The notes below the pieces were generated by a model. The model was not told the DNA's origin. It saw only the letters and a list, made by a program, of their open reading frames with translations, and searched no databases. This document shows, one piece after another, positions 27,582-55,733 of a stretch of DNA of 64,000 bases. The position numbers and the translations under genes are program-made. Numbering within the stretch: the stretch's first letter is position 1; every line of letters begins with the position of its first letter. The stretch spans positions 186,001 to 250,000 of the IMG/VR virus record IMGVR_UViG_3300037042_006844; one strand, written 5' to 3'.

Positions 27582-28265
27582 TCATTTCTCACACGAATGC
27601 AAAATGGTGGTCTCGAAACGATATTTTTTATCAAAATGACCCAAATGATCATTTTTAGAAATCGCATCTGCAAAAAATTGGCTTGGACAGTAACATTTAT
27701 GATGATCAAACAAACTGTAATATGCTATATCGGCTGCGCAGGTTATACGGTTTAACGCTTCGATTGTAGCATCGTATGCGATATTGCGAATTGCAATACA
27801 GTGCGATCCGGTGCCCCATTTGAACCTATACACGTTTTGGTCCACAATATCTCGGCGCAGCCAGTGCGTTGACAAATAGTGATTTCCAAGCTGCAAAAAC
27901 TCCCAATCGGTCGGAACCTTTGTGACAAACTCCGCCACTTTTTTTGTAAAATCGGGACAAAACTCGACATCATCTTCGCAGATGAGTATTTGATTAAACT
28001 TGTTCAGCCTAGCGTCTATGATGCAATGTAAATGTCCCAACAAAAGACTCAATTCGGAATCGGTGACACAAGTCATCTGAGTAAACAGAGCTTTGTTGAT
28101 GGAACTGCGAAATTCAAAATCGATGTTATGATTTTTGAAATGCTCGGTGATATACATTTGCCGGTCAACAAAATTGCTACATGTTATAACATAAACTTTA
28201 TCAAATATAGTATTAATCGATGTGAAATCGTTTGAGATCATATTGTAGAATAATTTTAATGTCAC
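27582..28265 (-). CDS. GT25-like glycosyltransferase
   Basis: FDKVYVI, R, ILICEDD, W..LQLG. Confidence 0.8.
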   Translation of the reverse strand: MTLKLFYNMISNDFTSINTIFDKVYVITCSNFVDRQMYITEHFKNHNIDFEFRSSINKALFTQMTCVTDSELSLLLGHLHCIIDARLNKFNQILICEDDVEFCPDFTKKVAEFVTKVPTDWEFLQLGNHYLSTHWLRRDIVDQNVYRFKWGTGSHCIAIRNIAYDATIEALNRITCAADIAYYSLFDHHKCYCPSQFFADAISKNDHLGHFDKKYRFETTILHSCEK

Positions 28266-29665
28266 ACATTGTGATGTTTTATAGCAATATGTTTTGCACC
28301 ATAAACAGAATATCCCTGTTTGTTTGCTTCAATGGAAAACCAAGTTCCGTCTGACCAGCAATTTTGTTTACCACCACATCCATCGAGATATTCCGCGTCA
28401 ACGAATTTGTAACGCAATGTATCAAACACTCTGGTTTTAATCAAACAGTGCGTATCGGCTCTATCAATTTTCACCAATCCGGTTTCTGACGGATAATATT
28501 GGAACCTTTTTTGACAATCGCCCTCAAAAACCACCGAGCCACAATCATGATATCCCCATTTTTCATGCGTCAACGCGGGAATTACAATATCTTTATCGCA
28601 AGCAATCAAAAAATTGAGTGTGTTTGTGGGAATGGTTTCGAAATCGGAATCCACCCACCAGACATAATCGTTATTTTTAGCATACCGATTAACAATGAAA
28701 TTTCTGGTTTCTACCAGACCTTTGATCCTCCGGGGAAATTTATCAGTATCGTATCGATGTAAATCGTGACCCAAATGATATCCAAAATCCAGTTTTAGAA
28801 CCTCGACGCTGGCAAATGGATGGTCAGATTTGGCAAACTGTTGGCAAACCGAATATGTATTATCAATACTATCGCCCTCCGCCAATACAATCGTAATTAG
28901 TTTTTTATCATAATCCAATGACCATAGCTGATTGAACAGATTTGGTAAAAACTTCGCGGTGTTTTTTGCGGGAATTCCTATCAATATTTTATGTGATTGC
29001 GGGGGTGTGCAGTTCCATGTTTTATGCCATTTATGCACCGCATATGCGAGTGGGCACGTTTGTTTGAAATTTTCCTGACTGCGATTCGGCTCATTCCAAG
29101 AATATGGATAAAAATATTCCGGTGTAAAAAACCAATGATCGGAGCGAGTGTAATACTGTTTTGCAATATCACTGAAAAATTCAGGCCCACTTATTTTATG
29201 TATGTAATCTTGTCGATATTGCCCAGCCAGACGACGATACTCGATATTGATCGGCAAACGTTCGATAGCATCCGTTAGCAATTCGCACTCGGGACTAGCT
29301 GCAAAAAAACCAATAGCAACCTCGCCATTGTTTTGAATTCCGCCAAGAAATTCGAACTCTAAAAAACTATCTGGCATTCGCTTCAAACATTCAAAATCGG
29401 CATCGATATATATTCCTCCGTAACGATGAATAATATTGTATCTGGCTAAATCAGCTTTGTATGTTGGATGAAGCTGATTACTATGATATTCTTCGAGCAG
29501 CTCATCGGGAATGATTTTGTGCTGATCGATCATGACATCGTCCCAAACGACGATTTTGTAATCCGAATACATTGCCGCCCATTCAGATATATTCCTCTGG
29601 TATTTTTCTGGCATTTTGGCATTCCCTACCCAAATAAAATTTATGCTTTTTGGAATTTTTTGCAT
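28262..29665 (-). CDS. Two-domain glycosyltransferase (GT32-like + Anp1/GT62-like)
   Basis: IPKSINFIW, ADLARY...GGIYIDAD, GP, YAVH.W; second domain EGDS.D, RN, WVDSD. Confidence 0.8.
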   Translation of the reverse strand: MQKIPKSINFIWVGNAKMPEKYQRNISEWAAMYSDYKIVVWDDVMIDQHKIIPDELLEEYHSNQLHPTYKADLARYNIIHRYGGIYIDADFECLKRMPDSFLEFEFLGGIQNNGEVAIGFFAASPECELLTDAIERLPINIEYRRLAGQYRQDYIHKISGPEFFSDIAKQYYTRSDHWFFTPEYFYPYSWNEPNRSQENFKQTCPLAYAVHKWHKTWNCTPPQSHKILIGIPAKNTAKFLPNLFNQLWSLDYDKKLITIVLAEGDSIDNTYSVCQQFAKSDHPFASVEVLKLDFGYHLGHDLHRYDTDKFPRRIKGLVETRNFIVNRYAKNNDYVWWVDSDFETIPTNTLNFLIACDKDIVIPALTHEKWGYHDCGSVVFEGDCQKRFQYYPSETGLVKIDRADTHCLIKTRVFDTLRYKFVDAEYLDGCGGKQNCWSDGTWFSIEANKQGYSVYGAKHIAIKHHNV

Positions 29666-29669: not shown

Positions 29670-30389
29670 TCAACCGATTAAACTTTTGAACATCACATCT
29701 GGATTATCAACGCCGGATTTACAATCGTGTCGATACGACTGCTGCCGACAAATGATTTCGTTGGGAATATAACTTTTCATGAAAGGCTCAGAGTCGGATT
29801 TGAACAAATCCAGTTTCAATGCGTGTGTAAAATATCCAAACACGAAATCGACTGGCGCCTGGTCGGTTCTAAATTTGTTTATCAACCGCGTTAACGTTTT
29901 CTTACCTTGAATCGCCACTATATGTGATGCATACGCGTATTCGCATAACGATACATATTCATCAATCGGCTCAAATTTCCACGAACTTGTTTTGCTTCCG
30001 TGATGACCGATATTCAACAATTCCCATTCGTTTGGGACGTGCTTCATAAATACATCAAATTTCGTTTCATAGTCGTTTTCAAATATAATGTCGTCTTCCA
30101 AAATTAATAGTTTATCAATTCCTCTGTAAACACACTCTGCAAAAATACTAAGATAGCATAATTTAAGACTTGTGGCACCAGGATGCAACCATGCGACAGG
30201 GTCCCAATACAGAATAAACCCTTCACATGGCTTTCCTTCAAAATACTCTTTTGGCGGAGCAATTCTCAGATTGTATTTAATCCCCAAACTATCAAGATAG
30301 TCAGTGATGCGTTTCTGGCGACCCGTATTCTCAACCGTGCTGATAACAAAGACGTGATCGAAATATTGATTGATGATGTTAGATTTCAT
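29670..30389 (-). CDS. GT25-like glycosyltransferase
   Basis: FDHVFVI, LILEDD, WELLNIG. Confidence 0.8.
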   Translation of the reverse strand: MKSNIINQYFDHVFVISTVENTGRQKRITDYLDSLGIKYNLRIAPPKEYFEGKPCEGFILYWDPVAWLHPGATSLKLCYLSIFAECVYRGIDKLLILEDDIIFENDYETKFDVFMKHVPNEWELLNIGHHGSKTSSWKFEPIDEYVSLCEYAYASHIVAIQGKKTLTRLINKFRTDQAPVDFVFGYFTHALKLDLFKSDSEPFMKSYIPNEIICRQQSYRHDCKSGVDNPDVMFKSLIG

Positions 30390-30438
30390 ATTTTTGGAGG
30401 AAGGAAACCTCTTCGGCTTTAGCCTAGGGGTAGTTGAC
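30390..30438 (+). mobile_element. 49-bp collapsed IS200/IS605 scar (left end fused to right end through one hairpin)
   Basis: TTCAT|ATTTTTGGAGGAAGGAAACCTCTTCGGCTTTAGCCTAGGGGTAGTTGAC matches 5' half of LE and 3' half of RE of 51357-52681. Confidence 0.85.
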
Positions 30439-31105
30439 TGTATAGATTGCTTTTGAAATTGACGTATGTATCTTTTACATAGGATAGCTCATCTGCGCAT
30501 TTTCTATAACTCAATTGATATGCTATGTGTTCTTCTGGTATGTATGATGTCATTTCAGTTCGTTTGTATAACTCATTGAATGTATAGTCGATTGAAAGAT
30601 GCCAATTCCAGTGGTTCAGCATGTGTTTGAAAGGAACATATGCTGTGTTTCTGATCATCATGAAATGTGTGGTGTGATGCCAGTTCAAAGGTTTCGAAAC
30701 CAAATCGCTGATTTTTTCTTTTATTGTGTCAGTGTCGTGCATCGGATGATACCCAAGATTTAATATGTCCCAATCAGATGGAACTTTATTGTAAAACCTC
30801 TTAAACTTCTCTTGCCAATCTCTCAACAAAAAACAATCATCTTCAATGATCCCAACTCGTTTAATGCCACTGATTCGACACGATTCGGTTATGGACAGAT
30901 ATGCCGAAATCAGACTGATGGATGGCCTGGACTCTCGTTGTGGGGGGCTATGAAGAATTCGGTTTGGATCGATAATTTCAAAAAACGGCGCGATGTGGAA
31001 CTCAAATTTGACACCACGAGAATCCAAATGGCTTCGGATATAATCCACTCTATTCGAGTCGATGGTTGTTATGACAAAAACTTTTTCACAAATATCGTTT
31101 AACAT
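30419..31105 (-). CDS. GT25-like glycosyltransferase (C-terminal SQLPLG* encoded by IS right end)
   Basis: KVFVIT, IIEDDC, WDILNLG; close paralog of 62982-63647. Confidence 0.8.
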   Translation of the reverse strand: MLNDICEKVFVITTIDSNRVDYIRSHLDSRGVKFEFHIAPFFEIIDPNRILHSPPQRESRPSISLISAYLSITESCRISGIKRVGIIEDDCFLLRDWQEKFKRFYNKVPSDWDILNLGYHPMHDTDTIKEKISDLVSKPLNWHHTTHFMMIRNTAYVPFKHMLNHWNWHLSIDYTFNELYKRTEMTSYIPEEHIAYQLSYRKCADELSYVKDTYVNFKSNLYSQLPLG

Positions 31106-31143: not shown

Positions 31144-32061
31144 ATGGAAGTCACAATTTTCACTTATAATAATGGTTCTGGTATTGTAGCAGACATACTC
31201 CTTTTGCAAAACCTGTTTATCAATAATGTAACAAAAACCGCAAAAGTCATATTCACCGATGCTTGTGGTTGGGAGGCTCAAAGCGGCGATCTCGGCGTTT
31301 GGGTCCAAAATCCCAGATATGACCAATTGTTCCGTTTCAAAAAAAATATCTGGTTCATCAATGAAGAGTGGGTCACCGACTATGATCTGAGCCATATCAA
31401 CGATTTTGATTATGTGGTATGCAAAAGTAAATTTGGCAAAAATTTACTTACGCCATATAGGCAGGATGTTTTATACATTCCATTTTTAAGTTATGATTGT
31501 TATGACCCCACTATAATCCGAACTGATAGGTTTCTACATCTGAATGGAAAAGCCATTCAGAAAAATACAGAATTGGTTATGCAGCAAACGGTGCCATTAA
31601 CAGTGTTGGACGTAACATCGAGGTTCGAGAAAATACCAAACAATATCAATTATATCACGGCCTTTTTGAACCGCAACCAAGTTAAATCGTTGCTCAATAC
31701 CCACGCCGTCCATCTATGCCCTAGTATGTATGAAAGCTGGGGGCACTATTTGTTTGAAGGGCTATCAACTGGTGCGGAAATCATATGCAGCGATATAGCA
31801 GCATTTTCAGAGCATTTGGACCCAAATTTGGTGCATATGCTTCCCGCAGTCGAAGGAAAAAATTTGGATTATTGGTTTGACTCCGACAACGCTACAAACC
31901 ATTTTTCTTTGCGCAAAAGCTACTACATCGATCCACAACTGTTTGCAGATTATATAAACAATTTCAAACCCAAAGGAAACCATCACGCTCGTCGCCAGTT
32001 ATATTTGGATATCATGTCCCGAAGTGAAAAACTGTTGATTGAGTTTTTCCTTAACTTGTAA
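31144..32061 (+). CDS. GT-B glycosyltransferase
   Basis: GKAIQKNT, HLCPSMYESWGHYLFE. Confidence 0.75.
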   Translation: MEVTIFTYNNGSGIVADILLLQNLFINNVTKTAKVIFTDACGWEAQSGDLGVWVQNPRYDQLFRFKKNIWFINEEWVTDYDLSHINDFDYVVCKSKFGKNLLTPYRQDVLYIPFLSYDCYDPTIIRTDRFLHLNGKAIQKNTELVMQQTVPLTVLDVTSRFEKIPNNINYITAFLNRNQVKSLLNTHAVHLCPSMYESWGHYLFEGLSTGAEIICSDIAAFSEHLDPNLVHMLPAVEGKNLDYWFDSDNATNHFSLRKSYYIDPQLFADYINNFKPKGNHHARRQLYLDIMSRSEKLLIEFFLNL

Positions 32062-32800
32062 CAAACCTGTAGTTCAATCTGTCGTTGAAATTCTGTGGTG
32101 TGTATTTTGCAAAATTGTGTGTATCATAGAGCGATTGATTGTAGGATGCCCCCTCAACGCCAATATGGTTCAGTCTCGACAATTTTGGCGTGACTGTTTT
32201 GAAATCGTTTTTGATGTAATCCATGATTGTGTCCCCAACACAACCTTGATGATTCCATTTGCTCACGCACTCCCTCCACATTTTTGCGGTGCATAAATAA
32301 CCCCATGTGGCAAAATACGACATTTCTGGAAATGCAGCCGAACCATAATTGTTTTTGATTTCCAAAATTTCTTTTCCATCATCATTCGTAGGTGGCTCAA
32401 TCAAATTGTCTTTGTTGAGATACGTGAAAATAGTTTTATTGTCATAATACGAAGAATTGATATAGAATTGAGTAATGTCGTTTATGTCATTGCTGAATAT
32501 GCAATCATCCTCTATATAAATGGCGTGATCCAACCGTAACCGCTCAAAACTGTAATACATGGTTACATATTGGTTGAGTAACAATCCATATTTGAACTGG
32601 TTGATCAACACCCGAACGTTTGGATATTTACGCAGTGCTATGATCGGATCTAAATCCACAAACTCTGGCTCCACCAAAAACACAAAATCGATTTTGTCAA
32701 AATCTCGCTGACCCAAACAAGATTTTACATACTGGTTGAAATACCCAACTCTGTGTGGTTGCCCAAGATAAACTGGTGTGACAATTGTTGTTCTGCTCAT
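32051..32800 (-). CDS. GT-A glycosyltransferase-like protein
   Basis: IYIEDD, TWG, SRLNHIG motifs. Confidence 0.7.
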   Translation of the reverse strand: MSRTTIVTPVYLGQPHRVGYFNQYVKSCLGQRDFDKIDFVFLVEPEFVDLDPIIALRKYPNVRVLINQFKYGLLLNQYVTMYYSFERLRLDHAIYIEDDCIFSNDINDITQFYINSSYYDNKTIFTYLNKDNLIEPPTNDDGKEILEIKNNYGSAAFPEMSYFATWGYLCTAKMWRECVSKWNHQGCVGDTIMDYIKNDFKTVTPKLSRLNHIGVEGASYNQSLYDTHNFAKYTPQNFNDRLNYRFVTS

Positions 32801-33402
32801 AAATCATCGGGTGTGCTATAATTCCAAATCAAAGGCCAAAGTCGCTCAAACACGCAACATGCTGTAAGTGTCTCTCTGTTATCGACTATTTTGGTGTATT
32901 GATTAAATATTGTTTGTGCGTGTATCCACCAATCTAGGCTTTTACTGACGATAAACTTTCGAGGAACAATATACTGAGAACCCGCACTGAACACGAACTG
33001 CGTTGTGGTATTGTAACCCCAATTACCAAACAGTTTATAGCAAACTTCAAGCATGGGGAGGGACTCTCCGGCACCAGGCCCGCCAGTAAAATCTTTTGTA
33101 ACTGGTCCCCAATTACTTCCCAGCCACACCACTTGATCTGGGTCTGGGTTTTTTCTTATTAAATCCAAAACATCCCAACAATGATCGAACGGGTCTGCTT
33201 GTAAGAAGACGGTTTGTGTATCTAAAGAATTGTAATTGTTTACTATGTGATGCAGCACTGTGCCAGTGTCTCGTCCGAAATTGGGCACGGATGTAAACTT
33301 TTGTTTTATATCTGGTAGTCCTTTGTTGTATATCTGAACACCACATGGTAACGAATCTACCCAATCAATATTTTCTCGGTATCTGGTTATGATCACCGTC
33401 AT
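32797..33402 (-). CDS. DUF3431-like (GT-associated) protein
   Basis: RYRENIDW, IYNKG, PNFGR, HIVNNY, FLQADPFDH, GSQYIV, FERLW. Confidence 0.75.
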   Translation of the reverse strand: MTVIITRYRENIDWVDSLPCGVQIYNKGLPDIKQKFTSVPNFGRDTGTVLHHIVNNYNSLDTQTVFLQADPFDHCWDVLDLIRKNPDPDQVVWLGSNWGPVTKDFTGGPGAGESLPMLEVCYKLFGNWGYNTTTQFVFSAGSQYIVPRKFIVSKSLDWWIHAQTIFNQYTKIVDNRETLTACCVFERLWPLIWNYSTPDDL

Positions 33403-34580
33403 CACAATTTGACCCATCCTTTTTTGATAACATCTACCACATATTTGCGATCTTCTTCAGTGACCCACCAACCGACCGGTATGCACACCAACTTACCAAC
33501 AATGTCGTCCAAACTCGGCAAATGCACACTATATTCAGCCACGCATGTATGTTTGTCGTTTCTTTCATGAACTTGACTCACCATAATATTGTGGGCTTTC
33601 ATATGGTTCATAAATCCCAACTTGTCATGCACCAATATGCTGTAAATCCACGCTGCTGATTGGCAATTGCCGTTCTGATTTACCAAAGTAAGGTTTGGAA
33701 TATTGGCGAGATGTGTGTCGTAAAATGCCGCATTCTTTTTGTGAATTGCAATACTGGCATCAATATTTTTAAGGTTCTCAATACCGATTGCGGCATTAAC
33801 ATCGTTCATGTGAAATTTGAATCCCCATTCTGAAATGTTGGTTTCACATCGAAAATCTTTACGGTCACTGGAACGGTCAATACCATACCAACGTAGCAGC
33901 TTGCCTCGTTCGTGATACCAGTCTGTGGGGCATATCAAAGCACCACCGTCCACGCTCGTCAAATGCTTGATTGCTTGAAAACTGAACACATTAAAATTGT
34001 GATATTCTTTACCTCCGACTTTGAGACCATCGTGAAATTTGCTGCCGAAAGCGTGAGCGCAATCTTCAATAACCATCGGAACAAAGCCAAAACGGTTTTT
34101 TGTTTTGCGTTTGATTTCCTCAATTCGATCAAGGTCGATTGGATAACCGCCCCAATGCACCACCAATATCACTTTTGTATTTTTGGTGATTTTACGTTCC
34201 AAATCATCCAAATCCATGTTAATGGTTTTTGGATCAACATCGACCCATTTGATTCGCAGTCCATTGGCTAGGATTGGCCAATTGGTTGCAGTGCAAGTCA
34301 TGGGTGTGGACAGAATTTCGCTATTTTCATCCAGCCCAGGCCACTCCAAATTTGGTTTTTTCAACAAATGTAAAGCCAGATGCAATGCAGAAGTGGCACT
34401 ATTGGTGGTCAGTAGATGCTTGCAGCCAATATATCGTTTGAGTTTTGTTTCAAACTCATCGACTTTCGGACCCTGACCGATAAAACCTGAATGCAGGACT
34501 TCGTTGACTGCTGCACTTACGGTGCTAGCCATTCTAACTTTGAAAAGCGGCAACATATCTTTGTGGGTAGCTTTCGACAT
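33402..34580 (-). CDS. DegT/DnrJ/EryC1/StrS PLP-dependent sugar aminotransferase
   Basis: GPKVDEFE, NSATSALHLAL, IEDCAHAFG, FSFQAIKHLT..DGG. Confidence 0.93.
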   Translation of the reverse strand: MSKATHKDMLPLFKVRMASTVSAAVNEVLHSGFIGQGPKVDEFETKLKRYIGCKHLLTTNSATSALHLALHLLKKPNLEWPGLDENSEILSTPMTCTATNWPILANGLRIKWVDVDPKTINMDLDDLERKITKNTKVILVVHWGGYPIDLDRIEEIKRKTKNRFGFVPMVIEDCAHAFGSKFHDGLKVGGKEYHNFNVFSFQAIKHLTSVDGGALICPTDWYHERGKLLRWYGIDRSSDRKDFRCETNISEWGFKFHMNDVNAAIGIENLKNIDASIAIHKKNAAFYDTHLANIPNLTLVNQNGNCQSAAWIYSILVHDKLGFMNHMKAHNIMVSQVHERNDKHTCVAEYSVHLPSLDDIVGKLVCIPVGWWVTEEDRKYVVDVIKKGWVKL

Positions 34581-48400: not shown

Positions 48401-48402
48401 TT

Positions 48403-49892: not shown

Positions 49893-50344
49893 AATTCATT
49901 AGTCATAGAGGTAATATCGACGGTAGAAACAAACAAACTGAGAATCACCCAGATCAGATTCTCAAAGCAATTTCGCTTGGCTATGATGTTGAAATCGATA
50001 TTTGGGATGTTGACTGTAAACTGTGGTTGGGGCATGATGGTCCAGAATACGAAACTAACGTGACATTTTTATTAGAACATCATCAAAAGTTGTTGATCCA
50101 TTGCAAAAATGATGCTGCGTTGTTCAAACTGCATAGTGTTTCGGAACTAAACATTTTTACTCATGCCGACGATCCATTTACAATTTCCAGCAAAAACAAC
50201 CTTTTAATTCACCCGCACACAAAAACAGCACGTAGATGCGGAATTTTGATCATGCCTGAGATGTCCACCTATACTGTGGATGAAATTTTGCAATTTGATG
50301 GAATAGTCAGTGATAACATAGATTTTTATGAAAATCATTTATGA
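49889..50344 (+). CDS. Glycerophosphodiester phosphodiesterase-like (PLC-like) protein
   Basis: ISHRGN, EN, VEID, LGHD, HCKN, GIVSD. Confidence 0.8.
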   Translation: MKFISHRGNIDGRNKQTENHPDQILKAISLGYDVEIDIWDVDCKLWLGHDGPEYETNVTFLLEHHQKLLIHCKNDAALFKLHSVSELNIFTHADDPFTISSKNNLLIHPHTKTARRCGILIMPEMSTYTVDEILQFDGIVSDNIDFYENHL

Positions 50345-50396
50345 CTTAAAAATTGCCTATAGCACATCGATGAATTAACTGGTTTTAATGACATGT

Positions 50397-51356
50397 TCAT
50401 GGTTTAATAAAAGTGTCGTGAATGTTATGGTAATTTATTCTACCAGAAAAAACTTGATCAAACGGAACATATATATACAATAACGCGTGTCTAACATAGA
50501 CTGTATTTTGATCCATCGCGTGCAGTGCGCAATTCAAATTAAGCTTTCTTTCTGCATTGGAGTCATTTACAAAATTTTTCATGAACGCATATACTATAGG
50601 ATGGTCATTTTTGTTTAATCTATCAAACTCTTTATATAGATCATAATTGTGTTTGAGACAATTTTCAAAAAATAATTTCATCGTTGTTGGTGATCCAATG
50701 TGATAATAATCACCGCCGTAGAGATGCCCCGTGCGTGCAAGAAAAAAATTTAGGTGTATGATTCGTTTTTGTATTTGTTTTAGCGGCGAAATTATAAAAT
50801 TGTTTATGTCCCTGAATTCATGTTCGTTTATTTCGGTCCCATAGCACATCAATAAATCTGGCCGGGTGTGGATCACCAAATCAGCATCATCATTTACCAA
50901 GTCCACCATTTTTTCATACTTCACAAGCTGTCGGCTGGTCCAATAATCAAAATCAATAACTCTATCTTTTAATTCGACATTTTTAATATTGCGCAGACAG
51001 TCTTCGTATTGATCAAACTGCTCTTTTTTTAATGCATCTACATCGGCCAATACTATTTTTTTGAAATCGATGTGCCGTTTGAACTCATCGAGCCATTCGT
51101 TGAAATCATCCAGTGTATATTCTTTGTATAATTCTGGAAAGTATGTTTTGCCATACTTCAAAATGGCTGGCTTAAAATTAATCTCTGGGTATGTGTATAA
51201 AACATGTTCAAATTCTATTTTGTCGTAGTTGGTGTTTGCCTCCTTATTTATATAGTCAATGTCCATTTTATCAAAAAAATTTTTGAAATACGTGGCAGTG
51301 GCACTGCCACGCAAATGACCTTTATATATAACTTGAATCTTTAATACGTTTTTCAT
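50397..51356 (-). CDS. Putative glycosyltransferase-like protein
   Basis: GHLR and TRPDL motifs; located in glycosylation island. Confidence 0.5.
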   Translation of the reverse strand: MKNVLKIQVIYKGHLRGSATATYFKNFFDKMDIDYINKEANTNYDKIEFEHVLYTYPEINFKPAILKYGKTYFPELYKEYTLDDFNEWLDEFKRHIDFKKIVLADVDALKKEQFDQYEDCLRNIKNVELKDRVIDFDYWTSRQLVKYEKMVDLVNDDADLVIHTRPDLLMCYGTEINEHEFRDINNFIISPLKQIQKRIIHLNFFLARTGHLYGGDYYHIGSPTTMKLFFENCLKHNYDLYKEFDRLNKNDHPIVYAFMKNFVNDSNAERKLNLNCALHAMDQNTVYVRHALLYIYVPFDQVFSGRINYHNIHDTFIKP

Positions 51357-51509: not shown

Positions 51510-52670
51510 ATGATAACATACAATGTCAAATTAAAGTTTGCTAAACAAGATGATTACAATAATCTTCTTGAATCGCTCAAACTAAATCAATTGGCTTGGA
51601 ATATCATAAGTGAAGAACGATTCTCAATGACGGGTGGAAGATTGAAGCTTCTTCACGACAAGTGTTATTATAAAGTAAAAGAAGCAATTCCTACAATTCC
51701 TTCTCAATTTATCATTAAAGCAGAACAAGATGTAATTGCTACATATAAAACTATCAAGTCAAATAAACATAAACTTGATTCTCCTGCAATAAAAAAGAAT
51801 CTATCAATACAACTAGATAAACGCATATACAAGTGGATAGATAAAACTAATATCAAAATAACAACATTAGATAAACAAGCAATCGCTTCGTTTGATGTGT
51901 ATGATAAATTAAACCAATTTGACTTCAATAAGTTAAAAGATCCAAAACTATTTTTCAAAAATGGAGATTTTTACCTAAGTCTAATATTTGATACGAATGT
52001 TCCTTTTGTAGATAACAATAAAATCATAGGAATTGATGTTGGATTAAAAAGACTTGTATCAACAAGTGAAGGTATCATAATTAAAGGCAATGAATTCAAT
52101 GGACATAAACGTAAAATTCGTTGGAACAAAAGAAAACTTCAATCCAAGAAAAAATCACATTCCGCAAGAACAAAACATAAAAAACTTAAAAGGCGTGAAT
52201 CAAACTTTAGCAGAAATTATATACACAATGTTACAAAGAATGTAATTGTAAATACAAGTGCAAATACACTCGTAGTAGAAGATTTGAGCAAAATCAAAAG
52301 CAAAAATAAAGGTAGAAGATTTAATAATAGATTGAGTCAACTTCCATTTTTTGCGTTTAGATCCATATTAACATACAAGGCACAACTTTATGGGAAAAAA
52401 GTTGAAACAGTTAACCCTGCCTATACAAGCCAAATAGACCATAGAGGTTTAGCTGGTGGAAAAAGAAAGGGATGTAGATATTATGGATTGGATAAAGTAA
52501 TATTAGATTCGGATGTAAATGCCGCAATCAATATTGCAAATAGATATGTAAACAATTTAAGTTTGCATAAACACTCTGTTTCGTGCTGCAAAGCACTTGA
52601 TGGACAGGTGACTGTCAACTCACCAATCGTCGGAAGTTTCTTCCGGCAAGCCCCTATGGCTTTAGCCTAG
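51510..52670 (+). CDS. tnpB: TnpB RNA-guided endonuclease lacking canonical zinc-ribbon cysteines
   Basis: GIDVG / VVEDL / DSDVNAA RuvC triad; YKAQ, VNPAYTSQ. Confidence 0.92.
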   Translation: MITYNVKLKFAKQDDYNNLLESLKLNQLAWNIISEERFSMTGGRLKLLHDKCYYKVKEAIPTIPSQFIIKAEQDVIATYKTIKSNKHKLDSPAIKKNLSIQLDKRIYKWIDKTNIKITTLDKQAIASFDVYDKLNQFDFNKLKDPKLFFKNGDFYLSLIFDTNVPFVDNNKIIGIDVGLKRLVSTSEGIIIKGNEFNGHKRKIRWNKRKLQSKKKSHSARTKHKKLKRRESNFSRNYIHNVTKNVIVNTSANTLVVEDLSKIKSKNKGRRFNNRLSQLPFFAFRSILTYKAQLYGKKVETVNPAYTSQIDHRGLAGGKRKGCRYYGLDKVILDSDVNAAINIANRYVNNLSLHKHSVSCCKALDGQVTVNSPIVGSFFRQAPMALA

Positions 52671-52701
52671 GGGTTGTTGACAACGATTTCGCCAGAACAT
52701 T
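52560..52701 (+). ncRNA. Cis omega-RNA overlapping tnpB 3' end; guide about 52682-52701 (5' boundary approximate)
   Basis: GGTGA-CTGTCAAC-TCACC, CGGAAG-TTT-CTTCCG and RE hairpins; GTCAA/TTGAC pseudoknot. Confidence 0.7.
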
Positions 52702-53106
52702 AGTTTCCGCATTCATTCTTCCTTTGTTTTGATCGAACATCGTAAACAACTTATGAAATTGGTCGTCTTTGTTGATAACTACCCAAGTATTGGTTTGCTC
52801 ATCCATGCACATGACCACGGCATCCAGTTTGATTTTGGCAAGCTTTTTGTCCAAAATTTCAATAATAGTATCAGAAGCGACTTTCAATGGAATCGTTTCA
52901 GTCTCGGTTTTGACGTTTATCACAACCAAATTTTCGTATAGAGTTTCGAGGTCAATATTGGCGCGTTGCCATTGTTGTTCTGTATCTGAATAAAACACCA
53001 CTGTATTATCATCAATCCTCACAACATCGGTTTTATTGATATGCCGCAATGTGCTCATTGGCACGGAATACATTTTGTTGTTGTAGTATATCTCTTTCAT
53101 GCTCAT
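52654..53106 (-). CDS. Hypothetical protein (C-terminal STTPRLKP* from IS right end)
   Basis: ORF in operon with ATGA overlap to upstream gene. Confidence 0.6.
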   Translation of the reverse strand: MSMKEIYYNNKMYSVPMSTLRHINKTDVVRIDDNTVVFYSDTEQQWQRANIDLETLYENLVVINVKTETETIPLKVASDTIIEILDKKLAKIKLDAVVMCMDEQTNTWVVINKDDQFHKLFTMFDQNKGRMNAETNVLAKSLSTTPRLKP

Positions 53107-55733
53107 AGGCTTTTGTAGATTTTCGAATTGACCAGACTTTCTAGGAAATACTCAATCTCGACTTTGTAACGAATTGTTTTGAGATACAAATGCGCAGACC
53201 GAATCAACTCCAAATTTTGGATTTTTTGCTCTAAATCATTTTGATTTTCAATGTAAAGTGGATATGACTCTCCCAAATATTCTTCCACGGCTGGAAGCCG
53301 GTTGATAAACAATGGGGTGCCACGGGCAATGCACTCGATGATGCCGTTGTTGGCACTGCTGTCATACAAATCGAGATACACCAAATTCTCGGACAAAATC
53401 TGGTCGTATTCTTCATTTGGCAAAAAATCCAGCACTTGCACAGAGTTTCGTTGCTCAATCGAAACCGTTTGATTGTTCACGACCTCTTCGATCTTCTCCA
53501 ACCGCATGATCGTTTCTTTGCATTTATTGTTGGGAAGCAATCGAATTTTTTGATAACCTTGGGGTTGCACAGTATATAGTGCATTTAGCTTTCGCAGCCA
53601 CCAGCCGATTGATATCAATTTTTTGTTCGGGTTGCTGGCAAATTTATCAAAATCAAACTGCACCGCTGGTATTTCAGTTGGATGCAATAAAGATTCAACT
53701 TGAACAAACGGCAAATATTGTCTTATGAATCGGGCATGATATTCGCTTAGTGTGAACAGCCCTTTGCATTTGCGCAGACTATCCAGAAAATAAGGGTCGT
53801 GTAGGATAATATTGCAAAACGCACTATTGTCACTGAACCAGGGAGACATGTTCGGTGGGTTGTGGAGAAAACCCACCCAGCTTTTGTTGTATGGAATCAA
53901 TTTTTGAAGAACAGATTCGTTCTTTCTCCAACTAAAATTGTTCTCTAAAAACCCGTCACAATATACACCATTGTCGGAATTTAATGCCGACATCTCATTC
54001 AACACATAATTCCAACCTGAACGATGTGAGTAGAAACTGAGTTGGCGACCCAGATTGAGTTTTTTTGGATATTTTTGAAGTGCTACTGTTTCTTTGAACT
54101 TCAAAACTACATCGCCGTATTCGCCTTTGGTCAACACGTTGCTTTTCTCGACGATGAATCCGGTTTCATTCAACACGTCCGCTTCGAAATTTCTGTCTTT
54201 GAGAATTAGTTTGCTGGTATTATTACGAATGCCATTGACAAACAAATCAACTATTTTGATGCCATACAAACTGGTTGGGGCACGATTGATCAGATCCCCA
54301 CTGAACACATCTGTTTGAAACTGTATATTTTTAGTGTGTTTGCCGATGATTTTGATGGAATACTGACCTCGTTTCAACTCAAAATTATGAACCGTGCCAT
54401 CGACTGTGAATTTCAAATCACAATCTTTCATCGACTCGATCAACATTTCTAGTTTGTAAACTTCTCCTCCGACGATTAGTTCGGATGTGCCATTACTCCA
54501 AACCCCCGAACTGAGGTTTTCTTGGTGCCATCCATTTTTGAAATAGATGGGAAACAACGAGCTTTCTTCGGTGAGATCGGTATGGGGCTGATAACTGTCG
54601 AGATGTGTGAAATACACGCTGCTGCGAATACTGTCATAATATGCTGCTTTGAAAACATTGCTTAAATCGTCATATGATGGATCAATACCTTTGGTGCGGG
54701 GATCGCAAACGGCATCTGTTACAATGTTGTCTGTGATTTTGATTACACTATAATCTACCTCGTATAATTTTTTATATCCAGTGAGATAGTCCACCATACC
54801 ACCGTGAAGTGGAGTGATGATTCCTTTGTTTTTCTCTTTTGCGGTATAACACGGAATGCTGAAGCCTTCTCCTCGACTGACGTTTACATACACGTCGCAA
54901 TTGTCATATAAACTCTGCATCCGATCAAAACTCAATGCATCCGTTATCAACGCTATCGGAGCGTATGCAAAATTGGCGTGCTTGTTTTTGATTTTATTGA
55001 CGATCAGGTTTTGAATCGTTTTGTCAAAACCCTTCAAATTAAATTTGTTGTCCGTCAGTTTGAGAACCAACAACGTTTCATCATCAAACTCGAACGTGCT
55101 CAAATAATTGTCGATCAAAAAAGATGTGTTTTTTCGACCAGCCAACGTGGTTACGTTCAGAAATTTGATGCGTTTTTCAAAACGACGATAATTTACGGCA
55201 ACAGGTGAGAAAATTTTGGCACAATTCAGCGTGTCGATTAAATTGATGCTTTCGTATGGAATGCTGGGCACCGTATGGGGGTCAACCACAATTTCTTTTT
55301 TGACACCTGATTTAATAAATACTTCTTTGGTCCATTGAGACGGAACACTAACAATATTCACAATACTATCATTAATAGCTTTTACCCATTTTTCTGGCAA
55401 TGGATCAAAATCCCACACGGTTCTGCCAATGATTTTTCGGTCTCCAAACAGATCGGAGTAGTTTTCAAAAATTTTACCCCACATATTGGGGGTGATATGA
55501 ACTACTATTTCCGCATCTTTTAGTTTTTCGGATCGCCCAAAAAGGGGAAGTTTGCGTAGGTTGCTATGGAAATACTTTGCGAACTCCGTGTTGTTTTTGG
55601 TGGTAGCGCCGGATACTGGAACAAAATAAACATCTACACCTTGCTGCAAAAGGCTATACATATAACCCTTTGCAGCATTGGCATATCCGCTAGAACCGTC
55701 TGCACCAAAATATACAACTTGTTTAGAACTCAT
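53103..55733 (-). CDS. Three-domain protein: GT4-like + beta-sandwich + second GT-B-like domain
   Basis: GSSGYANAAKG...GEGFSIP; GWHQE...W; HRSGW, HPTE, IGWWLR, SANNGIIEC. Confidence 0.75.
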   Translation of the reverse strand: MSSKQVVYFGADGSSGYANAAKGYMYSLLQQGVDVYFVPVSGATTKNNTEFAKYFHSNLRKLPLFGRSEKLKDAEIVVHITPNMWGKIFENYSDLFGDRKIIGRTVWDFDPLPEKWVKAINDSIVNIVSVPSQWTKEVFIKSGVKKEIVVDPHTVPSIPYESINLIDTLNCAKIFSPVAVNYRRFEKRIKFLNVTTLAGRKNTSFLIDNYLSTFEFDDETLLVLKLTDNKFNLKGFDKTIQNLIVNKIKNKHANFAYAPIALITDALSFDRMQSLYDNCDVYVNVSRGEGFSIPCYTAKEKNKGIITPLHGGMVDYLTGYKKLYEVDYSVIKITDNIVTDAVCDPRTKGIDPSYDDLSNVFKAAYYDSIRSSVYFTHLDSYQPHTDLTEESSLFPIYFKNGWHQENLSSGVWSNGTSELIVGGEVYKLEMLIESMKDCDLKFTVDGTVHNFELKRGQYSIKIIGKHTKNIQFQTDVFSGDLINRAPTSLYGIKIVDLFVNGIRNNTSKLILKDRNFEADVLNETGFIVEKSNVLTKGEYGDVVLKFKETVALQKYPKKLNLGRQLSFYSHRSGWNYVLNEMSALNSDNGVYCDGFLENNFSWRKNESVLQKLIPYNKSWVGFLHNPPNMSPWFSDNSAFCNIILHDPYFLDSLRKCKGLFTLSEYHARFIRQYLPFVQVESLLHPTEIPAVQFDFDKFASNPNKKLISIGWWLRKLNALYTVQPQGYQKIRLLPNNKCKETIMRLEKIEEVVNNQTVSIEQRNSVQVLDFLPNEEYDQILSENLVYLDLYDSSANNGIIECIARGTPLFINRLPAVEEYLGESYPLYIENQNDLEQKIQNLELIRSAHLYLKTIRYKVEIEYFLESLVNSKIYKSL

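What the first reader, a model, noticed from the sequence alone, without database searches (positions are those of the whole stretch)
27582..55733. About 28-kb phage glycosylation island with roughly 20 glycosyltransferase-like domains
Seen: GT25-like x3, GT32+Anp1-like fusion, four paralogous GT-A genes, several GT-B genes, DUF3431-like, DegT aminotransferase, methyltransferase, propeller hydrolase and HAD-nucleotidyltransferase; further GTs at 1-593, 5486, 10442-12808, 62982 and 63941. No flippase, polymerase or obvious membrane export genes were seen. Inference: a cytoplasmic, giant-virus-style pathway building a complex glycan on virion proteins (or on DNA), rather than host O-antigen conversion.
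Basis: partly seen in the sequence, partly recalled or inferred. Interest (0 to 1): 0.65.

Follow-up and report, generated by a model that had tools for sequence, protein, structure and literature searches.

The report
Membrane-free glycosyltransferase island in jumbo phage
A 28-kb block of an uncultured ~300-kb phage related to a Microcystis phage is packed with soluble sugar-adding and sugar-making enzymes, most from unannotated families; it is conserved but cassette-variable in related phages, and what it coats with sugar (most likely the virus particle, possibly the host surface) is still unknown.

Summary
The island is real. Window 27582-55733 holds 30 tightly packed genes (97.5% coding), in a 303,564-bp IMG/VR phage record whose nearest cultured relative is Microcystis phage Mel-JY01 (PolB 39.5% identity).

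"About 20 GT domains" is an upper bound:
- 12 domains in 11 genes are well supported, by Pfam or PHROG hits, paralogy, two AlphaFold models (Z 13-15 to GT-A enzymes) or profile searches.
- 5 more are probable.
- 2 (48403, 49074) have no statistical support.

The island also encodes a sugar aminotransferase, a methyltransferase, a HAD-nucleotidyltransferase fusion, a GH130-like protein (lead only) and DUF3431.

No island protein has a predicted membrane helix. The whole record has no match to WbaP, WecA, Wzx, Wzy, Wzm or GtrA families. The only thymidylate-synthase homologue is a true ThyA, and no C5 DNA methylase was found; no Tet/JBP match either, but that search's positive control did not fire. 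DNA glycosylation is therefore unlikely.

Four related metagenomic phages carry the same island at 38-85% identity, with swapped cassettes. Mel-JY01 lacks it.

I read it as a cytoplasmic glycan factory. A virion-protein target is my best guess (about 0.4). Remodelling of the host envelope is the main rival. It is a new, much larger variant of known phage sugar-gene clusters.

The parts
27582..28265 (-). GT25-family glycosyltransferase (GT-A); absent from the four relatives examined
   Evidence: Pfam Glyco_transf_25, 33.4 bits against a cut-off of 24. Paralogue of 29670, 30419 and 62982.
28262..29665 (-). Two-domain GT: N-terminal GT32-type DXD domain plus C-terminal Anp1/GT62-like GT-A domain. 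Window-specific cassette.
   Evidence: Pfam Gly_transf_sug 52.3, Caps_synth 47.8, Anp1 66.1 and Glycos_transf_2 29.4 bits, all above cut-off. No homologue in L009-L012.
29670..30389 (-). GT25-family glycosyltransferase
   Evidence: Pfam 34.7 bits. 49% identical orthologues in L009 and L011.
30419..31105 (-). GT25-like paralogue
   Evidence: BLAST 1e-21 to 29670 and 3e-52 to 62982. PHROG glucosyltransferase 1.5e-4. Orthologues are flagged GT25 weak or faint.
31144..32061 (+). Probable GT-B protein (sub-threshold)
   Evidence: Pfam Glycos_transf_1 E 1.9e-4, 21.5 bits, below the cut-off of 26.4. Conserved at 52-61% in all four relatives.
32051..32800 (-). Probable GT-A protein (GNT-I-like, sub-threshold)
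   Evidence: Pfam GNT-I E 1.8e-3. hhalign E 6e-4 to the GT25 group. 59-61% orthologues.
32797..33417 (-). DUF3431 protein, function unknown
   Evidence: Pfam 33.4 bits against a cut-off of 25. Duplicated in L012. The literature gives no function.
33402..34580 (-). DegT-family NDP-sugar aminotransferase. Window-specific cassette.
   Evidence: Pfam DegT 243 bits. Best PDB relatives are 4xau/4zwv (E about 1e-117) and CalS13 (1e-102), against perosamine synthase at 1e-24. Below every NCBIfam equivalog cut-off. Absent from L009-L012.
34584..35477 (-). GH130-like (beta-mannoside phosphorylase-like) protein; lead only
   Evidence: ESM Atlas feature score 0.96 to a viral cluster in which 22% of members carry PF04041; further hits carry DUF1861, GH130 or BMT. 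No Pfam, PHROG or phage hit. 70-78% identity in relatives.
35481..35948 (-). Conserved 155-aa protein, unknown
   Evidence: No Pfam, PHROG or NCBIfam hit. 40-47% orthologues, always next to the methyltransferase.
35935..36615 (-). SAM-dependent methyltransferase (Methyltransf_24; weak likeness to sugar O-methyltransferases)
   Evidence: Pfam 53.4 bits; weak Methyltransf_3 and RMNT_CmcI hits. 70-79% orthologues.
36666..37784 (-). GT-A fold glycosyltransferase of an unannotated family (U3), with a C-terminal helical domain
   Evidence: No Pfam or PHROG hit. 20 homologues, none with a Pfam domain. AF2 pLDDT 83.5. Foldseek TarP 1e-6. VIA Z 14.8, rmsd 3.2 Å over 173 residues to GtrB; all 50 top entries are GT-A enzymes. 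Invariant E108-E109-D110.
37781..38803 (-). Probable GT-A protein (U4). The true start is probably Met14 of the longest ORF (37781-38842).
   Evidence: Atlas score 0.97-0.98 to clusters named dihydrostreptosyltransferase or carrying 13% Glycos_transf_2; the Atlas record starts at residue 14. Invariant D104 and D106. Local hhalign E 7e-4 to U3 at the DXD strand. No PDB or Pfam hit.
38800..39702 (-). GT-A fold glycosyltransferase of an unannotated family (U5)
   Evidence: 23 homologues, none with a Pfam domain. AF2 pLDDT 89.7. Foldseek LH3 GT domain 4e-6. VIA Z 13.3, rmsd 2.8 Å over 171 residues. Invariant E100-P101-D102.
39949..41112 (-). GT-A-like protein (U6), remote homologue of U3
   Evidence: hhalign 94.4%, E 9.5e-8 over 242 columns to the U3 family. 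Its paralogue at genome 98979-100148 has a weak Glyco_transf_21 hit.
41109..43282 (-). Two tandem paralogues (41109-42104 and 42101-43282) of a divergent GT-B (GT4-like) family
   Evidence: Mutual BLAST 4e-35. 513 representative clusters in the 1.84-billion-protein library. The family profile hits PDB 4xso at E 0.005. Pfam matches among the 51 members scanned were 7 to Glyco_trans_1_2, 6 to Glycos_transf_1 and 2 to Glyco_trans_1_4, and to no other family.
43255..44292 (-). Probable GT-B protein. The start is probably Met33 of the longest ORF (43255-44388).
   Evidence: Pfam Glycos_transf_1 E 7.3e-5, 22.8 bits, below cut-off. Orthologues of 345-347 aa are flagged weak or faint. hhalign E 4e-4 to the 41109 family.
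44294..44719 (-). Small beta-rich domain protein (141 aa), paralogue of 46158
   Evidence: Orthologues of 141 aa in all four relatives. 30-35% identity between 46158 and the relatives' 141-aa proteins at this position.
44725..46143 (-). GT-B (Glycos_transf_1) glycosyltransferase with a 130-aa N-terminal extension
   Evidence: Pfam 37.3 bits. 83-84% orthologues. Paralogue of 5486-6445.
46158..46601 (-). Small beta-rich domain protein (147 aa), homologous to the middle domain of the 876-aa protein
   Evidence: hhalign 94.3%, E 9.8e-8 over 98 columns to residues about 395-500 of 53103-55733. No Pfam hit.
46699..48075 (+). Fusion of a beta-phosphoglucomutase-like HAD domain and a sugar-1-phosphate nucleotidyltransferase. 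First gene of the window-specific plus-strand block.
   Evidence: Pfam HAD_2 106 bits and NTP_transferase 40.5 bits. NCBIfam bPGM and rmlA_long, below cut-offs.
48077..50344 (+). Four small genes of the window-specific block: 48077 (weak cupin; phrog_24762), 48403, 49074 and 49889 (phrog_34507).
   Evidence: None has a homologue in L009-L012.
50397..51356 (-). Orphan 319-aa gene, low GC (0.33)
   Evidence: No Pfam, PHROG or phage hit. GC.
51510..52670 (+). TnpB (IS605 OrfB / Cas12f-like) mobile-element gene inside the island, GC 0.31
   Evidence: Pfam OrfB_IS605 48.7 and TNB 47.2 bits. 58% identical copy at genome 147410-148606, and five more paralogues.
52654..53106 (-). 150-aa protein, unknown
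   Evidence: No significant hit.
53103..55733 (-). 876-aa three-part protein: GT-B domain (1-330), beta-rich domain (about 395-500) and a widespread unannotated ~320-aa C-terminal domain (probably GT-B-like)
   Evidence: phrog_2170 glycosyltransferase 5.6e-21. hhalign 99.5% to 44725. The C-terminal 537 aa has over 520 homologues, fused to GT1 or GT25 domains or standing alone, none with a Pfam domain over it. 186 loci among GTDB species genomes, many of them cyanobacteria. Weak GT-B signals fall at the same place: Pfam Glyco_trans_1_2 E 0.037 and PDB SenB-type GTs E 0.13-0.9.

Best explanation
The island is a phage-encoded, membrane-independent glycan-assembly line.

Shown:
- It has 30 co-directional, overlapping genes.
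- It encodes at least 12, and probably about 17, soluble GT-A and GT-B glycosyltransferase domains.
- It also encodes enzymes that make or tailor activated sugars: a phosphomutase-like HAD fused to a nucleotidyltransferase, a CalS13-like NDP-4-keto-sugar aminotransferase and a methyltransferase. A 4,6-dehydratase and an RmlD-like reductase lie nearby in the window.

Inferred:
- The enzymes act one after another in the infected cell's cytoplasm. They build a complex, partly methylated glycan that contains amino- or deoxy-sugars on an acceptor that is not a phage-primed lipid.
- The conserved core with swappable cassettes resembles serotype loci. That suggests the product is exposed to selection from outside.
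- My best guess for the acceptor is surface proteins of the virion (capsid, decoration or fibre proteins), as in chloroviruses, mimiviruses and mycobacteriophages.

Confidence that it is a multi-enzyme glycan-building island is about 0.85. Confidence that the acceptor is the virion is about 0.4; the score given is for the full statement.
For: GT content:
- Pfam, PHROG and paralogy.
- Two AF2 models with Z 13-15 to GT-A enzymes.
- hhalign links.
- GT-B family evidence.

Sugar-nucleotide genes.

Operon-like packing: 97.5% coding, with 4-bp overlaps.

Solubility, and no carrier or export genes:
- No TM helix in any island protein. Only 8 proteins with three or more candidate TM segments in the whole record, none looking like a flippase or polymerase.
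- No match to Bac_transf, Glycos_transf_4, Polysacc_synt, Wzy_C, GtrA or ABC2_membrane in 303 kb, with positive controls firing.

Conservation with cassette exchange:
- Four metagenomic relatives keep 19 of the 30 genes in order at 38-85% identity.
- They swap DegT, GT32-Anp1, one GT25, U4 and the 46699-53106 block for UDP-galactopyranose mutase, GT77-like Nucleotid_trans, a TylF methyltransferase, GT6 or radical-SAM genes.

DNA target disfavoured.

Precedent for soluble viral GTs on virion proteins: Freeman 2023 as cited in PMC12619734; the giant-virus cases rest on my own knowledge.
Against: - No virion glycoprotein is shown, and nothing in the sequence names the acceptor.
- The island sits among replication genes, next to the clamp loader and PolB. 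It is about 50 kb from the nearest structural gene.
- The motif found 4-9 nt before many structural-gene starts is absent from the long minus-strand GT block.
- Soluble GTs are also what a pathway on host lipid-linked intermediates would need.
- Relatives carry UDP-galactopyranose mutase. From my own knowledge, galactofuranose is typical of bacterial surface polysaccharides.
- The C-terminal domain of the 876-aa protein is common in cyanobacterial genomes.
- The record is 89% complete, so a missing gene cannot be excluded.
- The genes might not form one pathway.
Confidence: 0.4

Rival explanations
1. Host-envelope remodelling. The soluble GTs extend or rebuild a host lipid-linked or polymer intermediate (O-antigen, exopolysaccharide or sheath glycan of a cyanobacterial host). 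They would use the host's own priming enzyme and exporter, changing the infected cell's surface, for example to block superinfection or progeny loss on debris. This has been proposed for the 'LPS' clusters of large cyanomyoviruses.
For: - Large cyanomyoviruses (P-SSM2, S-SCSM1, S-SCSM2R) carry GT and NDP-sugar clusters that are read this way (PMC12801897).
- Huge-phage GTs are counted as envelope-associated in bioRxiv 10.64898/2026.10.24.761521.
- GTs of lipid-linked pathways are soluble or peripheral, so the lack of TM helices fits.
- Relatives encode UDP-galactopyranose mutase.
- The 876-aa protein has two GT-B-like domains. From my own knowledge this is reminiscent of polymerising O-antigen mannosyltransferases.
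- Its C-terminal domain is frequent in cyanobacteria.
- The island lies among early/replication-type genes.
Against: - The 303-kb record has no priming transferase, flippase, polymerase, ligase, ABC2 permease or GtrA.
- About 17 GT domains would have to mesh with host export specificity.
- In bacterial genomes, the C-terminal-domain gene has an ABC ATPase within 6 kb in only 10 of 80 loci.
- Several families (Anp1/GT62, GNT-I-like, DUF3431, and GT77 in relatives) are, from my own knowledge, typical of eukaryotic or giant-virus cytosolic and Golgi glycosylation rather than of O-antigen loci.
Confidence: 0.3
2. DNA hypermodification. The GTs attach mono- or oligosaccharides to hydroxylated pyrimidines in phage DNA to evade restriction.
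For: - Phage GTs do build DNA glycans (bioRxiv 10.1101/2023.12.21.572611; PMC13326640).
- The island lies beside replication genes, and a thymidylate-synthase homologue is in the window.
Against: - The only PF00303 gene passes ThyA equivalog cut-offs. It keeps the Leu (E. coli L143) and Asn (N177) equivalents in its ALPPCH and PFN motifs. 5hm-dCMP and 5ho-dCMP synthases carry Asp/Glu and Asp there.
- No Tet_JBP match, although the control for that family rang nowhere. No C5 DNA methylase.
- As far as I know, about 17 GT domains plus an aminotransferase and a methyltransferase far exceed any described DNA-glycan system.
Confidence: 0.04
3. Another cytoplasmic acceptor, or no single pathway. The block could be an accretion zone where several small, independent GT modules have piled up. 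These might include glycosylation of host or phage non-structural proteins, small molecules, or free oligosaccharides.
For: - Mosaic structure, with a TnpB and low-GC genes inside the island.
- Cassette gain and loss between relatives.
- About 15 further GT-like genes are scattered elsewhere in the record, so GT genes are not confined to one locus.
- One GT-like gene and the HAD block are on the opposite strand.
Against: - 19 genes keep order, orientation and 4-bp overlaps across relatives that have diverged to 38-85% identity. That argues for selection on the block as a unit.
- Sugar-nucleotide and tailoring genes are interleaved with the GTs.
Confidence: 0.2

Closest known systems
'LPS / cell-wall synthesis and modification' gene clusters of large T4-like cyanomyoviruses (P-SSM2, S-SCSM1, S-SCSM2R)
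   Same: - Large aquatic myovirus-type phage with T4-type replication genes.
- Clusters of GTs (GT25, GT2, GT1, GT6) with NDP-sugar dehydratases and epimerases.
- A GH130-type gene is reported in S-SCSM2R.
- No exporter genes.
- The target has not been tested (PMC12801897).
   Different: - 12-17 GT domains lie in one 28-kb block and about 30 in the record. S-SCSM2R has 13 in its whole genome, described as possibly the highest in a marine phage.
- Most families here have no Pfam or PHROG model.
- Six of seven island proteins queried have no tblastn match in 50,697 GenBank phage records; the seventh has only 25-28% identity to Streptomyces-phage GTs. A 19-kb megablast also finds nothing.
- The nearest cultured relative, Mel-JY01, lacks the island.
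Autonomous virion glycosylation of giant viruses (chlorovirus PBCV-1 capsid glycans; mimivirus fibril glycans). Comparison from my own knowledge.
   Same: - Many soluble, TM-less GTs, some multi-domain.
- A sugar methyltransferase.
- A DegT-type aminotransferase making a 4-amino-4,6-dideoxy-hexose-class sugar.
- Virus-encoded nucleotide-sugar synthesis.
- Lineage-specific gene clusters that give strain-specific glycans.
- Structural look-alikes of U3 include GT-A proteins of Bodo saltans virus, Tetraselmis virus and klosneuviruses.
   Different: - The host is a bacterium and the virus a tailed phage.
- No sequence-level orthology to the characterised giant-virus enzymes was shown here.
- No glycoprotein has been identified.
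Mycobacteriophage virion glycosylation (Freeman et al. 2023, cited in PMC12619734)
   Same: Phage-encoded soluble GTs that act in the cytoplasm on capsid and tail-tube proteins.
   Different: - As I recall, those systems have one to a few GT genes placed by the structural genes.
- Here there are over a dozen, plus sugar-nucleotide enzymes, about 50 kb from the structural module.
Bacterial O-antigen and capsule loci (Wzx/Wzy- or ABC-transporter-dependent), and GtrABC seroconversion modules of temperate phages
   Same: - A conserved core plus variable GT and sugar-synthesis cassettes at a fixed locus.
- A methyltransferase and a two-GT-domain large protein.
   Different: All the defining membrane components are absent from the whole record: priming phosphoglycosyltransferase, Wzx, Wzy, Wzm and GtrA.
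Phage DNA glycosylation systems (T4 alpha/beta-GT; 5mC-TET-GT systems; 5-hydroxycytosine arabinosylation in RB69 and DLP3)
   Same: Phage GTs and NDP-sugar genes close to replication and nucleotide-metabolism genes.
   Different: There is no enzyme to make a hydroxylated base. The ThyA homologue has the canonical Leu and Asn residues, and no TET or C5 methylase was found.

Membership tests
GT-A fold glycosyltransferases (for the unannotated genes 36666, 38800 and 39949) | Single Rossmann-like alpha/beta/alpha nucleotide-sugar-binding domain superposable on known GT-A enzymes | tested here: met
   - 36666: AF2 pLDDT 83.5; VIA Z 14.8, rmsd 3.2 Å over 173 residues to GtrB; all top 50 entries are GT-A enzymes.
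- 38800: pLDDT 89.7; Z 13.3, rmsd 2.8 Å over 171 residues.
- 39949: hhalign 94% to the 36666 family.
GT-A fold glycosyltransferases (for the unannotated genes 36666, 38800 and 39949) | Acidic DXD-type metal/nucleotide-binding motif after the fourth strand, conserved in the family | tested here: met
   Invariant E108-E109-D110, E100-P101-D102 and E103/D105/D106. These are variants of DXD, and their placement after a strand is read from the models.
GT-A fold glycosyltransferases (for the unannotated genes 36666, 38800 and 39949) | Glycosyl-transfer activity with a nucleotide-sugar donor | not testable with these tools
   Needs an enzyme assay. The same fold also occurs in nucleotidyltransferases, which appear among the Foldseek hits of 38800.
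GT-B (GT4-like) glycosyltransferases (41109, 42101, 43255, 31144 and the C-terminus of 53103-55733) | Significant match to GT-B families or structures | tested here: inconclusive
   - 41109/42101: the family profile hits PDB 4xso at E 0.005. Pfam matches among the 51 members scanned were 7 to Glyco_trans_1_2, 6 to Glycos_transf_1 and 2 to Glyco_trans_1_4, and to nothing else. I accept these two.
- 43255 and 31144: below the Pfam cut-off.
- C-terminal domain of the 876-aa protein: only E 0.037 to 0.9.
Wzx/Wzy-dependent or ABC-transporter-dependent surface-polysaccharide locus | Initiating phosphoglycosyltransferase (WbaP/Bac_transf or WecA/Glycos_transf_4) | tested here: not met
   No match in the 303-kb record, while 9 and 12 of 14 control genomes rang.
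Wzx/Wzy-dependent or ABC-transporter-dependent surface-polysaccharide locus | Flippase (Wzx), polymerase/ligase (Wzy_C) or ABC2 permease (Wzm) | tested here: not met
   No match to any of them. No polytopic membrane protein in the island.
GtrABC-type seroconversion module | GtrA flippase and a membrane GtrC-type transferase | tested here: not met
   No PF04138 match. No multi-TM protein in the window.
Phage DNA base glycosylation system | Enzyme that creates a hydroxyl acceptor on a pyrimidine: a TS homologue with Asp at the N177 position and Asp/Glu at the L143 position, or a 5mC methylase plus a TET/JBP dioxygenase | tested here: not met
   - There is a single TS homologue. It passes ThyA equivalog cut-offs (349.7 against 325 bits) and has the Leu and Asn equivalents (criteria).
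- No PF00145 match.
- No PF12851 match, but the control for that family was silent, so this last point is weak.
Virus-encoded virion glycosylation machinery (giant-virus or mycobacteriophage type) | Soluble virus-encoded GTs, with nucleotide-sugar supply, acting without host ER/Golgi or lipid carriers | tested here: met
   No TM helix in 30 proteins. HAD-nucleotidyltransferase, DegT, a 4,6-dehydratase and an RmlD-like reductase are in the window.
Virus-encoded virion glycosylation machinery (giant-virus or mycobacteriophage type) | Glycan demonstrably attached to a structural protein of the virion | not testable with these tools
   Needs virions. No collagen-like repeats were found; a few Ser/Thr-rich stretches occur in structural proteins, but these are not evidence.
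Large-cyanomyovirus 'LPS/cell-wall' gene cluster | GT plus NDP-sugar gene cluster in a large T4-like aquatic phage, homologous to the P-SSM2 or S-SCSM1 genes | tested here: inconclusive
   The architecture and the Pfam families overlap (GT25, GT1, GT2, GT6, GMD). However, tblastn of seven island proteins against all GenBank phages gave no cyanophage hit. Direct orthology to those clusters is therefore not shown.

The most novel reading that the evidence does not exclude
A whole lineage of uncultured ~300-kb phages, probably of cyanobacteria, coats its virions with a complex, strain-variable glycan. The glycan would be built entirely in the cytoplasm by more than fifteen phage-encoded soluble glycosyltransferases, most from families with no annotation. 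This would be the first bacteriophage counterpart of the autonomous glycosylation machinery of chloroviruses and mimiviruses, with cassette exchange producing 'viral serotypes'.
Probability: 0.3. Interest if true: 0.8.

Novelty: new variant of a known kind. Interest (0 to 1): 0.55.

Why it matters
If the product decorates the virion, tailed phages would join giant viruses in running a host-independent multi-step glycosylation pathway. That bears on how phages evade adsorption traps, grazers or host defences, and it would supply many new soluble glycosyltransferases for glycoengineering.

If the product instead changes the host surface, this would be the largest phage-borne envelope-remodelling kit yet seen.

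Either way the island defines unannotated protein families that deserve annotation:
- two GT-A families;
- one GT-B family with over 500 sequence clusters;
- a ~320-aa domain found at 186 loci in GTDB species genomes, many of them cyanobacteria.

About 30 GT-like genes in one phage genome is well above the 13 described as a possible record for marine phages (PMC12801897).

Tried and rejected
**Searches that found nothing**
- Megablast of 19.4 kb of the island against 50,697 phage records: no match.
- PHROG scans of 20 island proteins gave four annotated or named hits only.
- Profile searches of the U4, U5, U6 and 41109 family alignments against PDB sequences gave nothing meaningful. Single-sequence PDB searches of 48403 and 49074 gave nothing.
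- tblastn against phages found nothing for 48403, 49074, 50397, 41109, 34584 and the C-terminal module.
- The search for related loci in IMG/VR with the GT32-Anp1 fusion found one weak locus. With the 876-aa protein it found none.
- The search for related loci with alignment A8 failed because no conserved stretch was available.

**Analyses that did not help**
- BLAST and phmmer did not link the four putative GT-A genes to each other.
- The sigma-70 promoter and terminator scan was barely above shuffles and I did not use it.
- The classic T4 late-promoter octamer was not informative. A different upstream motif emerged instead.
- No collagen-like repeats were found as possible GT25 substrates.
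- The moraphage lineage (PMC12619734) has Bacteroidota hosts and shows no link to Mel-JY01. I did not pursue it.

No reads were laid and no expression evidence was obtained; I did not try another route.

**First attempt timed out**
- The first all-against-all hhalign run hit the time limit and was repeated on a subset.

Full report
**Context**

The window is bases 186001-250000 of a 303,564-bp IMG/VR virus record (linear, CheckV completeness 89%, GC 41%). It is a tailed phage.
- The window carries family-B DNA polymerase (58324-61041), a gp44-type clamp loader (55828-56787), ThyA, ClpP, PstS, an SNF2 helicase and a lysozyme-domain protein.
- The rest of the record has 37 tRNAs and a tmRNA.
- It also has a capsid, portal, terminase, sheath and tube module at 0-57 kb and 287-303 kb, homologous to that of Microcystis phage Mel-JY01.
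- Mel-JY01 is the nearest cultured relative (PolB 39.5% identity; next best 26-28%).

**Observation**

Window 27582-55733 (28,152 bp) contains 30 ORFs. It is 97.5% coding, with many 4-bp overlaps. Twenty-three genes are on the minus strand. GC is 0.39, like the rest of the window, except for an orphan gene (50397, GC 0.33) and a TnpB gene (51510, GC 0.31).

Pfam, above its gathering cut-offs, gives:
- two GT25 genes;
- a GT32 + Anp1/GT2 fusion;
- one Glycos_transf_1 gene;
- DUF3431;
- a DegT aminotransferase;
- a Methyltransf_24 gene;
- a HAD_2 + NTP_transferase fusion;
- TnpB.

A third GT25-like gene (30419) is a clear paralogue. The N-terminus of the 876-aa protein is a GT-B domain (PHROG 5.6e-21; hhalign 99.5% to 44725). 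Fourteen proteins or domains had no Pfam or PHROG hit at all.

**Resolving the unannotated genes**

36666 (U3):
- It has 20 homologues at 38-98% identity, none with a Pfam domain, on contigs up to 229 kb.
- An AlphaFold model from that alignment (pLDDT 83.5) matches only GT-A glycosyltransferases. Foldseek gives TarP at 1e-6. VIA-align gives Z 14.8, rmsd 3.2 Å over 173 residues to GtrB, and all 50 top entries are GT-A enzymes.
- In the viral structure library its look-alikes are phage and giant-virus GT-A proteins.

38800 (U5):
- It has 23 homologues, none annotated.
- It gives a better model (pLDDT 89.7), again GT-A (Z 13.3, rmsd 2.8 Å over 171 residues), with an invariant Glu-Pro-Asp at the DXD position.

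39949 (U6) is a remote homologue of U3 (hhalign 94.4%, E 9.5e-8, 242 columns).

37781 (U4) has only leads:
- Atlas scores of 0.97-0.98 to glycosyltransferase-named clusters;
- an invariant Asp-x-Asp;
- a local hhalign match to U3 (E 7e-4).

They are not recognisable paralogues by BLAST or phmmer.

The tandem pair 41109/42101 belongs to a family with 513 representative clusters.
- Its profile hits the GT4 structure 4xso (E 0.005).
- Pfam matches among the 51 members scanned were 7 to Glyco_trans_1_2, 6 to Glycos_transf_1 and 2 to Glyco_trans_1_4, and to nothing else.

31144, 32051 and 43255 have sub-threshold GT hits that recur in their orthologues.

48403, 49074 and 50397 gave nothing in Pfam (even at E 5), PHROGs or phage genomes; 48403 and 49074 were also negative against PDB sequences.

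34584 resembles GH130-type clusters by language-model features only (0.96).

My tally is 12 well-supported GT domains in 11 genes, 5 probable and 2 unsupported.

**The 876-aa protein**

Its C-terminal 537 residues form a module with over 520 homologues. The module is fused to a GT1 domain, fused to a GT25 domain, or standing alone. No Pfam model covers it.
- The last ~320 residues occur as a stand-alone gene at 186 loci among GTDB species genomes. Many are cyanobacteria: Nostoc, Anabaena, Dolichospermum, Moorena, Scytonema, Chamaesiphon.
- An ABC ATPase lies within 6 kb in only 10 of the 80 loci kept.
- Weak signals at one and the same place point to a GT-B C-terminal half: Pfam Glyco_trans_1_2 at E 0.037, and SenB-type GT structures at E 0.13-0.9.
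- The middle ~100 residues are homologous to two small island proteins, 46158 and 44294 (hhalign 94.3%, E 9.8e-8). Each of these sits just upstream of a GT-B gene.
- The module is also present in a 401-kb NCBI contig, next to another GT and methyltransferase cluster.

**Conservation**

Four metagenomic relatives (L009-L012, contigs of 65-229 kb) carry the island in the same order, between the 876-aa gene and, in L010, a DUF5661 gene.
- Nineteen of the 30 genes have orthologues at 38-85% identity.
- The relatives lack DegT, GT32-Anp1 and GT25 27582; two of them also lack U4. All four lack the whole 46699-53106 block (HAD-nucleotidyltransferase, cupin, three orphans, TnpB).
- In their place they have UDP-galactopyranose mutase, one or two Nucleotid_trans (GT77-like) genes, a TylF methyltransferase, a second U3 paralogue, and in one case GT6 and a radical-SAM gene.
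- Mel-JY01 has no counterpart. Its small GT cluster matches genes just right of the window (genome 249941-254862).

The island is thus a lineage-specific, conserved core with exchangeable cassettes, like a serotype locus.

**What it is not**

It is not a self-contained surface-polysaccharide locus.
- No island protein has a hydropathy-predicted TM helix. Only eight proteins in the record have three or more candidates.
- The record has no match to Bac_transf, Glycos_transf_4, Polysacc_synt, Wzy_C, GtrA or ABC2_membrane, with controls firing.

It is unlikely to be a DNA-glycosylation system.
- The only thymidylate-synthase-family gene (597-1730) passes ThyA equivalog cut-offs.
- It is unique in the record.
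- It keeps the Leu and Asn equivalents of E. coli L143 and N177. These are replaced by Asp/Glu and Asp in 5hm-dCMP and 5ho-dCMP synthases (PMC13326640).
- No C5 DNA methylase and no Tet/JBP match were found. The Tet/JBP control was silent, so that negative is weak.

**Sugar chemistry (inferred)**

- The DegT protein is closest to 4xau/4zwv and CalS13 (E about 1e-117 and 1e-102), far above perosamine synthase (1e-24). From my own knowledge CalS13 is an NDP-4-keto-6-deoxyhexose 4-aminotransferase.
- The window also holds a phosphomutase-like HAD fused to an RmlA-like nucleotidyltransferase, a GMD-like 4,6-dehydratase (21425-22618) and an RmlD-like reductase (6494-7390).
- Together these fit the making of 6-deoxy- and 4-amino-4,6-dideoxy-hexoses.
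- The methyltransferase has weak likeness to sugar O-methyltransferases.

**Mechanism and rivals**

The best-supported reading is a cytoplasmic assembly line of soluble GTs, with its own nucleotide-sugar supply, that makes a complex and variable glycan (about 0.85).

The acceptor is not shown. I favour virion proteins (about 0.4), for three reasons:
- the pathway lacks any carrier or export component;
- the enzyme families and layout recall giant-virus and mycobacteriophage systems;
- cassette variation implies an exposed product.

Against this:
- the island lies among replication genes, about 50 kb from the structural module;
- it lacks the upstream motif common before structural genes.

The rivals, in order of weight:
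- Host-envelope remodelling using host primer and exporter (about 0.3), as proposed for large cyanomyoviruses (PMC12801897).
- A non-unitary collection of GT modules, or another cytoplasmic acceptor (about 0.2).
- DNA modification (about 0.04).

**Comparison and novelty**

Phage GT and sugar clusters are known (P-SSM2, S-SCSM1, S-SCSM2R). S-SCSM2R's 13 GTs were called possibly the highest number in a marine phage.

This record has 12-17 GT domains in one block and about 30 GT-like genes overall:
- window flanks: GT6 at 3-593, and 5486, 11298, 12050, 62982, 63941;
- elsewhere in the record: genes starting at 86722, 88231, 98979, 109014, 135241, 136908, 137779, 251311, 254203 and 264502.

Most of its families are unannotated, and they are absent from 50,697 GenBank phage genomes. 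I rate it a new variant of a known kind, interest 0.55.

**Limits**

- TM prediction was a simple hydropathy scan.

Noticed in passing
Whole record; in the window before 8278-8934(-), 11298(+), 12829(+), 17410(+), 27004-27522(-), 51510(+) and 61278-62027(-): The motif (C)TATTTAT(A) ends 4-9 nt before the start codon of about 31 genes. It is about 10-fold enriched upstream of genes and densest in the structural module. It may be a late promoter or a leaderless-start signal. The long minus-strand GT block has no full copy.
   Followed up: partly
window 53103-54062 (C-terminal ~320 aa of the 876-aa protein); loci L015-L094: This domain is a widespread unannotated family. It has over 520 homologues in metagenomes and 186 loci in GTDB species genomes, many of them cyanobacteria. 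No Pfam model covers it. In phages it is fused to GT1 or GT25 domains.
   Followed up: partly
window 46158-46601, 44294-44719, and about 54230-54550 (middle of the 876-aa protein): There are three copies of a ~100-aa beta-rich domain with an FRW...DTRxLG-like signature. Two are stand-alone genes just upstream of GT-B genes and one is embedded between the two GT-B-like halves. It may bind a glycan or an acceptor.
   Followed up: partly
window 1733-3521 and 51510-52670; genome 147410, 257873, 267162, 270433, 302665: The record holds at least seven TnpB (IS605 OrfB / Cas12f-like) paralogues. One is paired with a serine resolvase (an IS607-like unit, GC 0.31) next to ThyA, and one lies inside the island.
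   Followed up: no
window 597-1730: The thymidylate synthase is 377 aa, with about 100 extra residues inserted relative to the 266-position Pfam model. Its catalytic motifs are canonical.
   Followed up: partly
window 37781-38842 and 43255-44388: The longest-ORF starts are probably wrong. Orthologues and an Atlas record indicate starts at Met14 (38803) and Met33 (44292), which removes the apparent gene overlaps.
   Followed up: yes
window 3685-4551, 8278-8934, 14405-15025, 15052-15903: Auxiliary genes lie left of the island: a Sir2-family protein, a PAS-domain protein with an N-terminal hydrophobic helix, ClpP, and a PstS-type phosphate-binding protein with a signal-like N-terminus. PstS fits a cyanobacterial or aquatic host.
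   Followed up: no
L014 (NCBI GCA_902730405.1, 401-kb contig), 1-22139: A far larger phage-like contig carries a comparable cluster: GT1, three or four methyltransferases, a 915-aa protein, a GT25 + C-terminal-module fusion and a GT32. GT and methyltransferase islands built around this module are therefore not confined to the lineage studied here.
   Followed up: no
L003 and L013 (Microcystis phage Mel-JY01, 4750-8430 of the record): Mel-JY01 has a 1226-aa 'methyltransferase FkbM' gene inside its structural module. It contains a GT-B segment similar to window genes 5486 and 44725, a hint that GT domains can be linked to virion genes in this group.
   Followed up: no
genome 0-57 kb and 287-303 kb: The structural module is split across the two ends of the linear record, so the contig is probably a permuted or circular assembly. 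I did not look for terminal repeats beyond eyeballing the first and last 60 nt.
   Followed up: no
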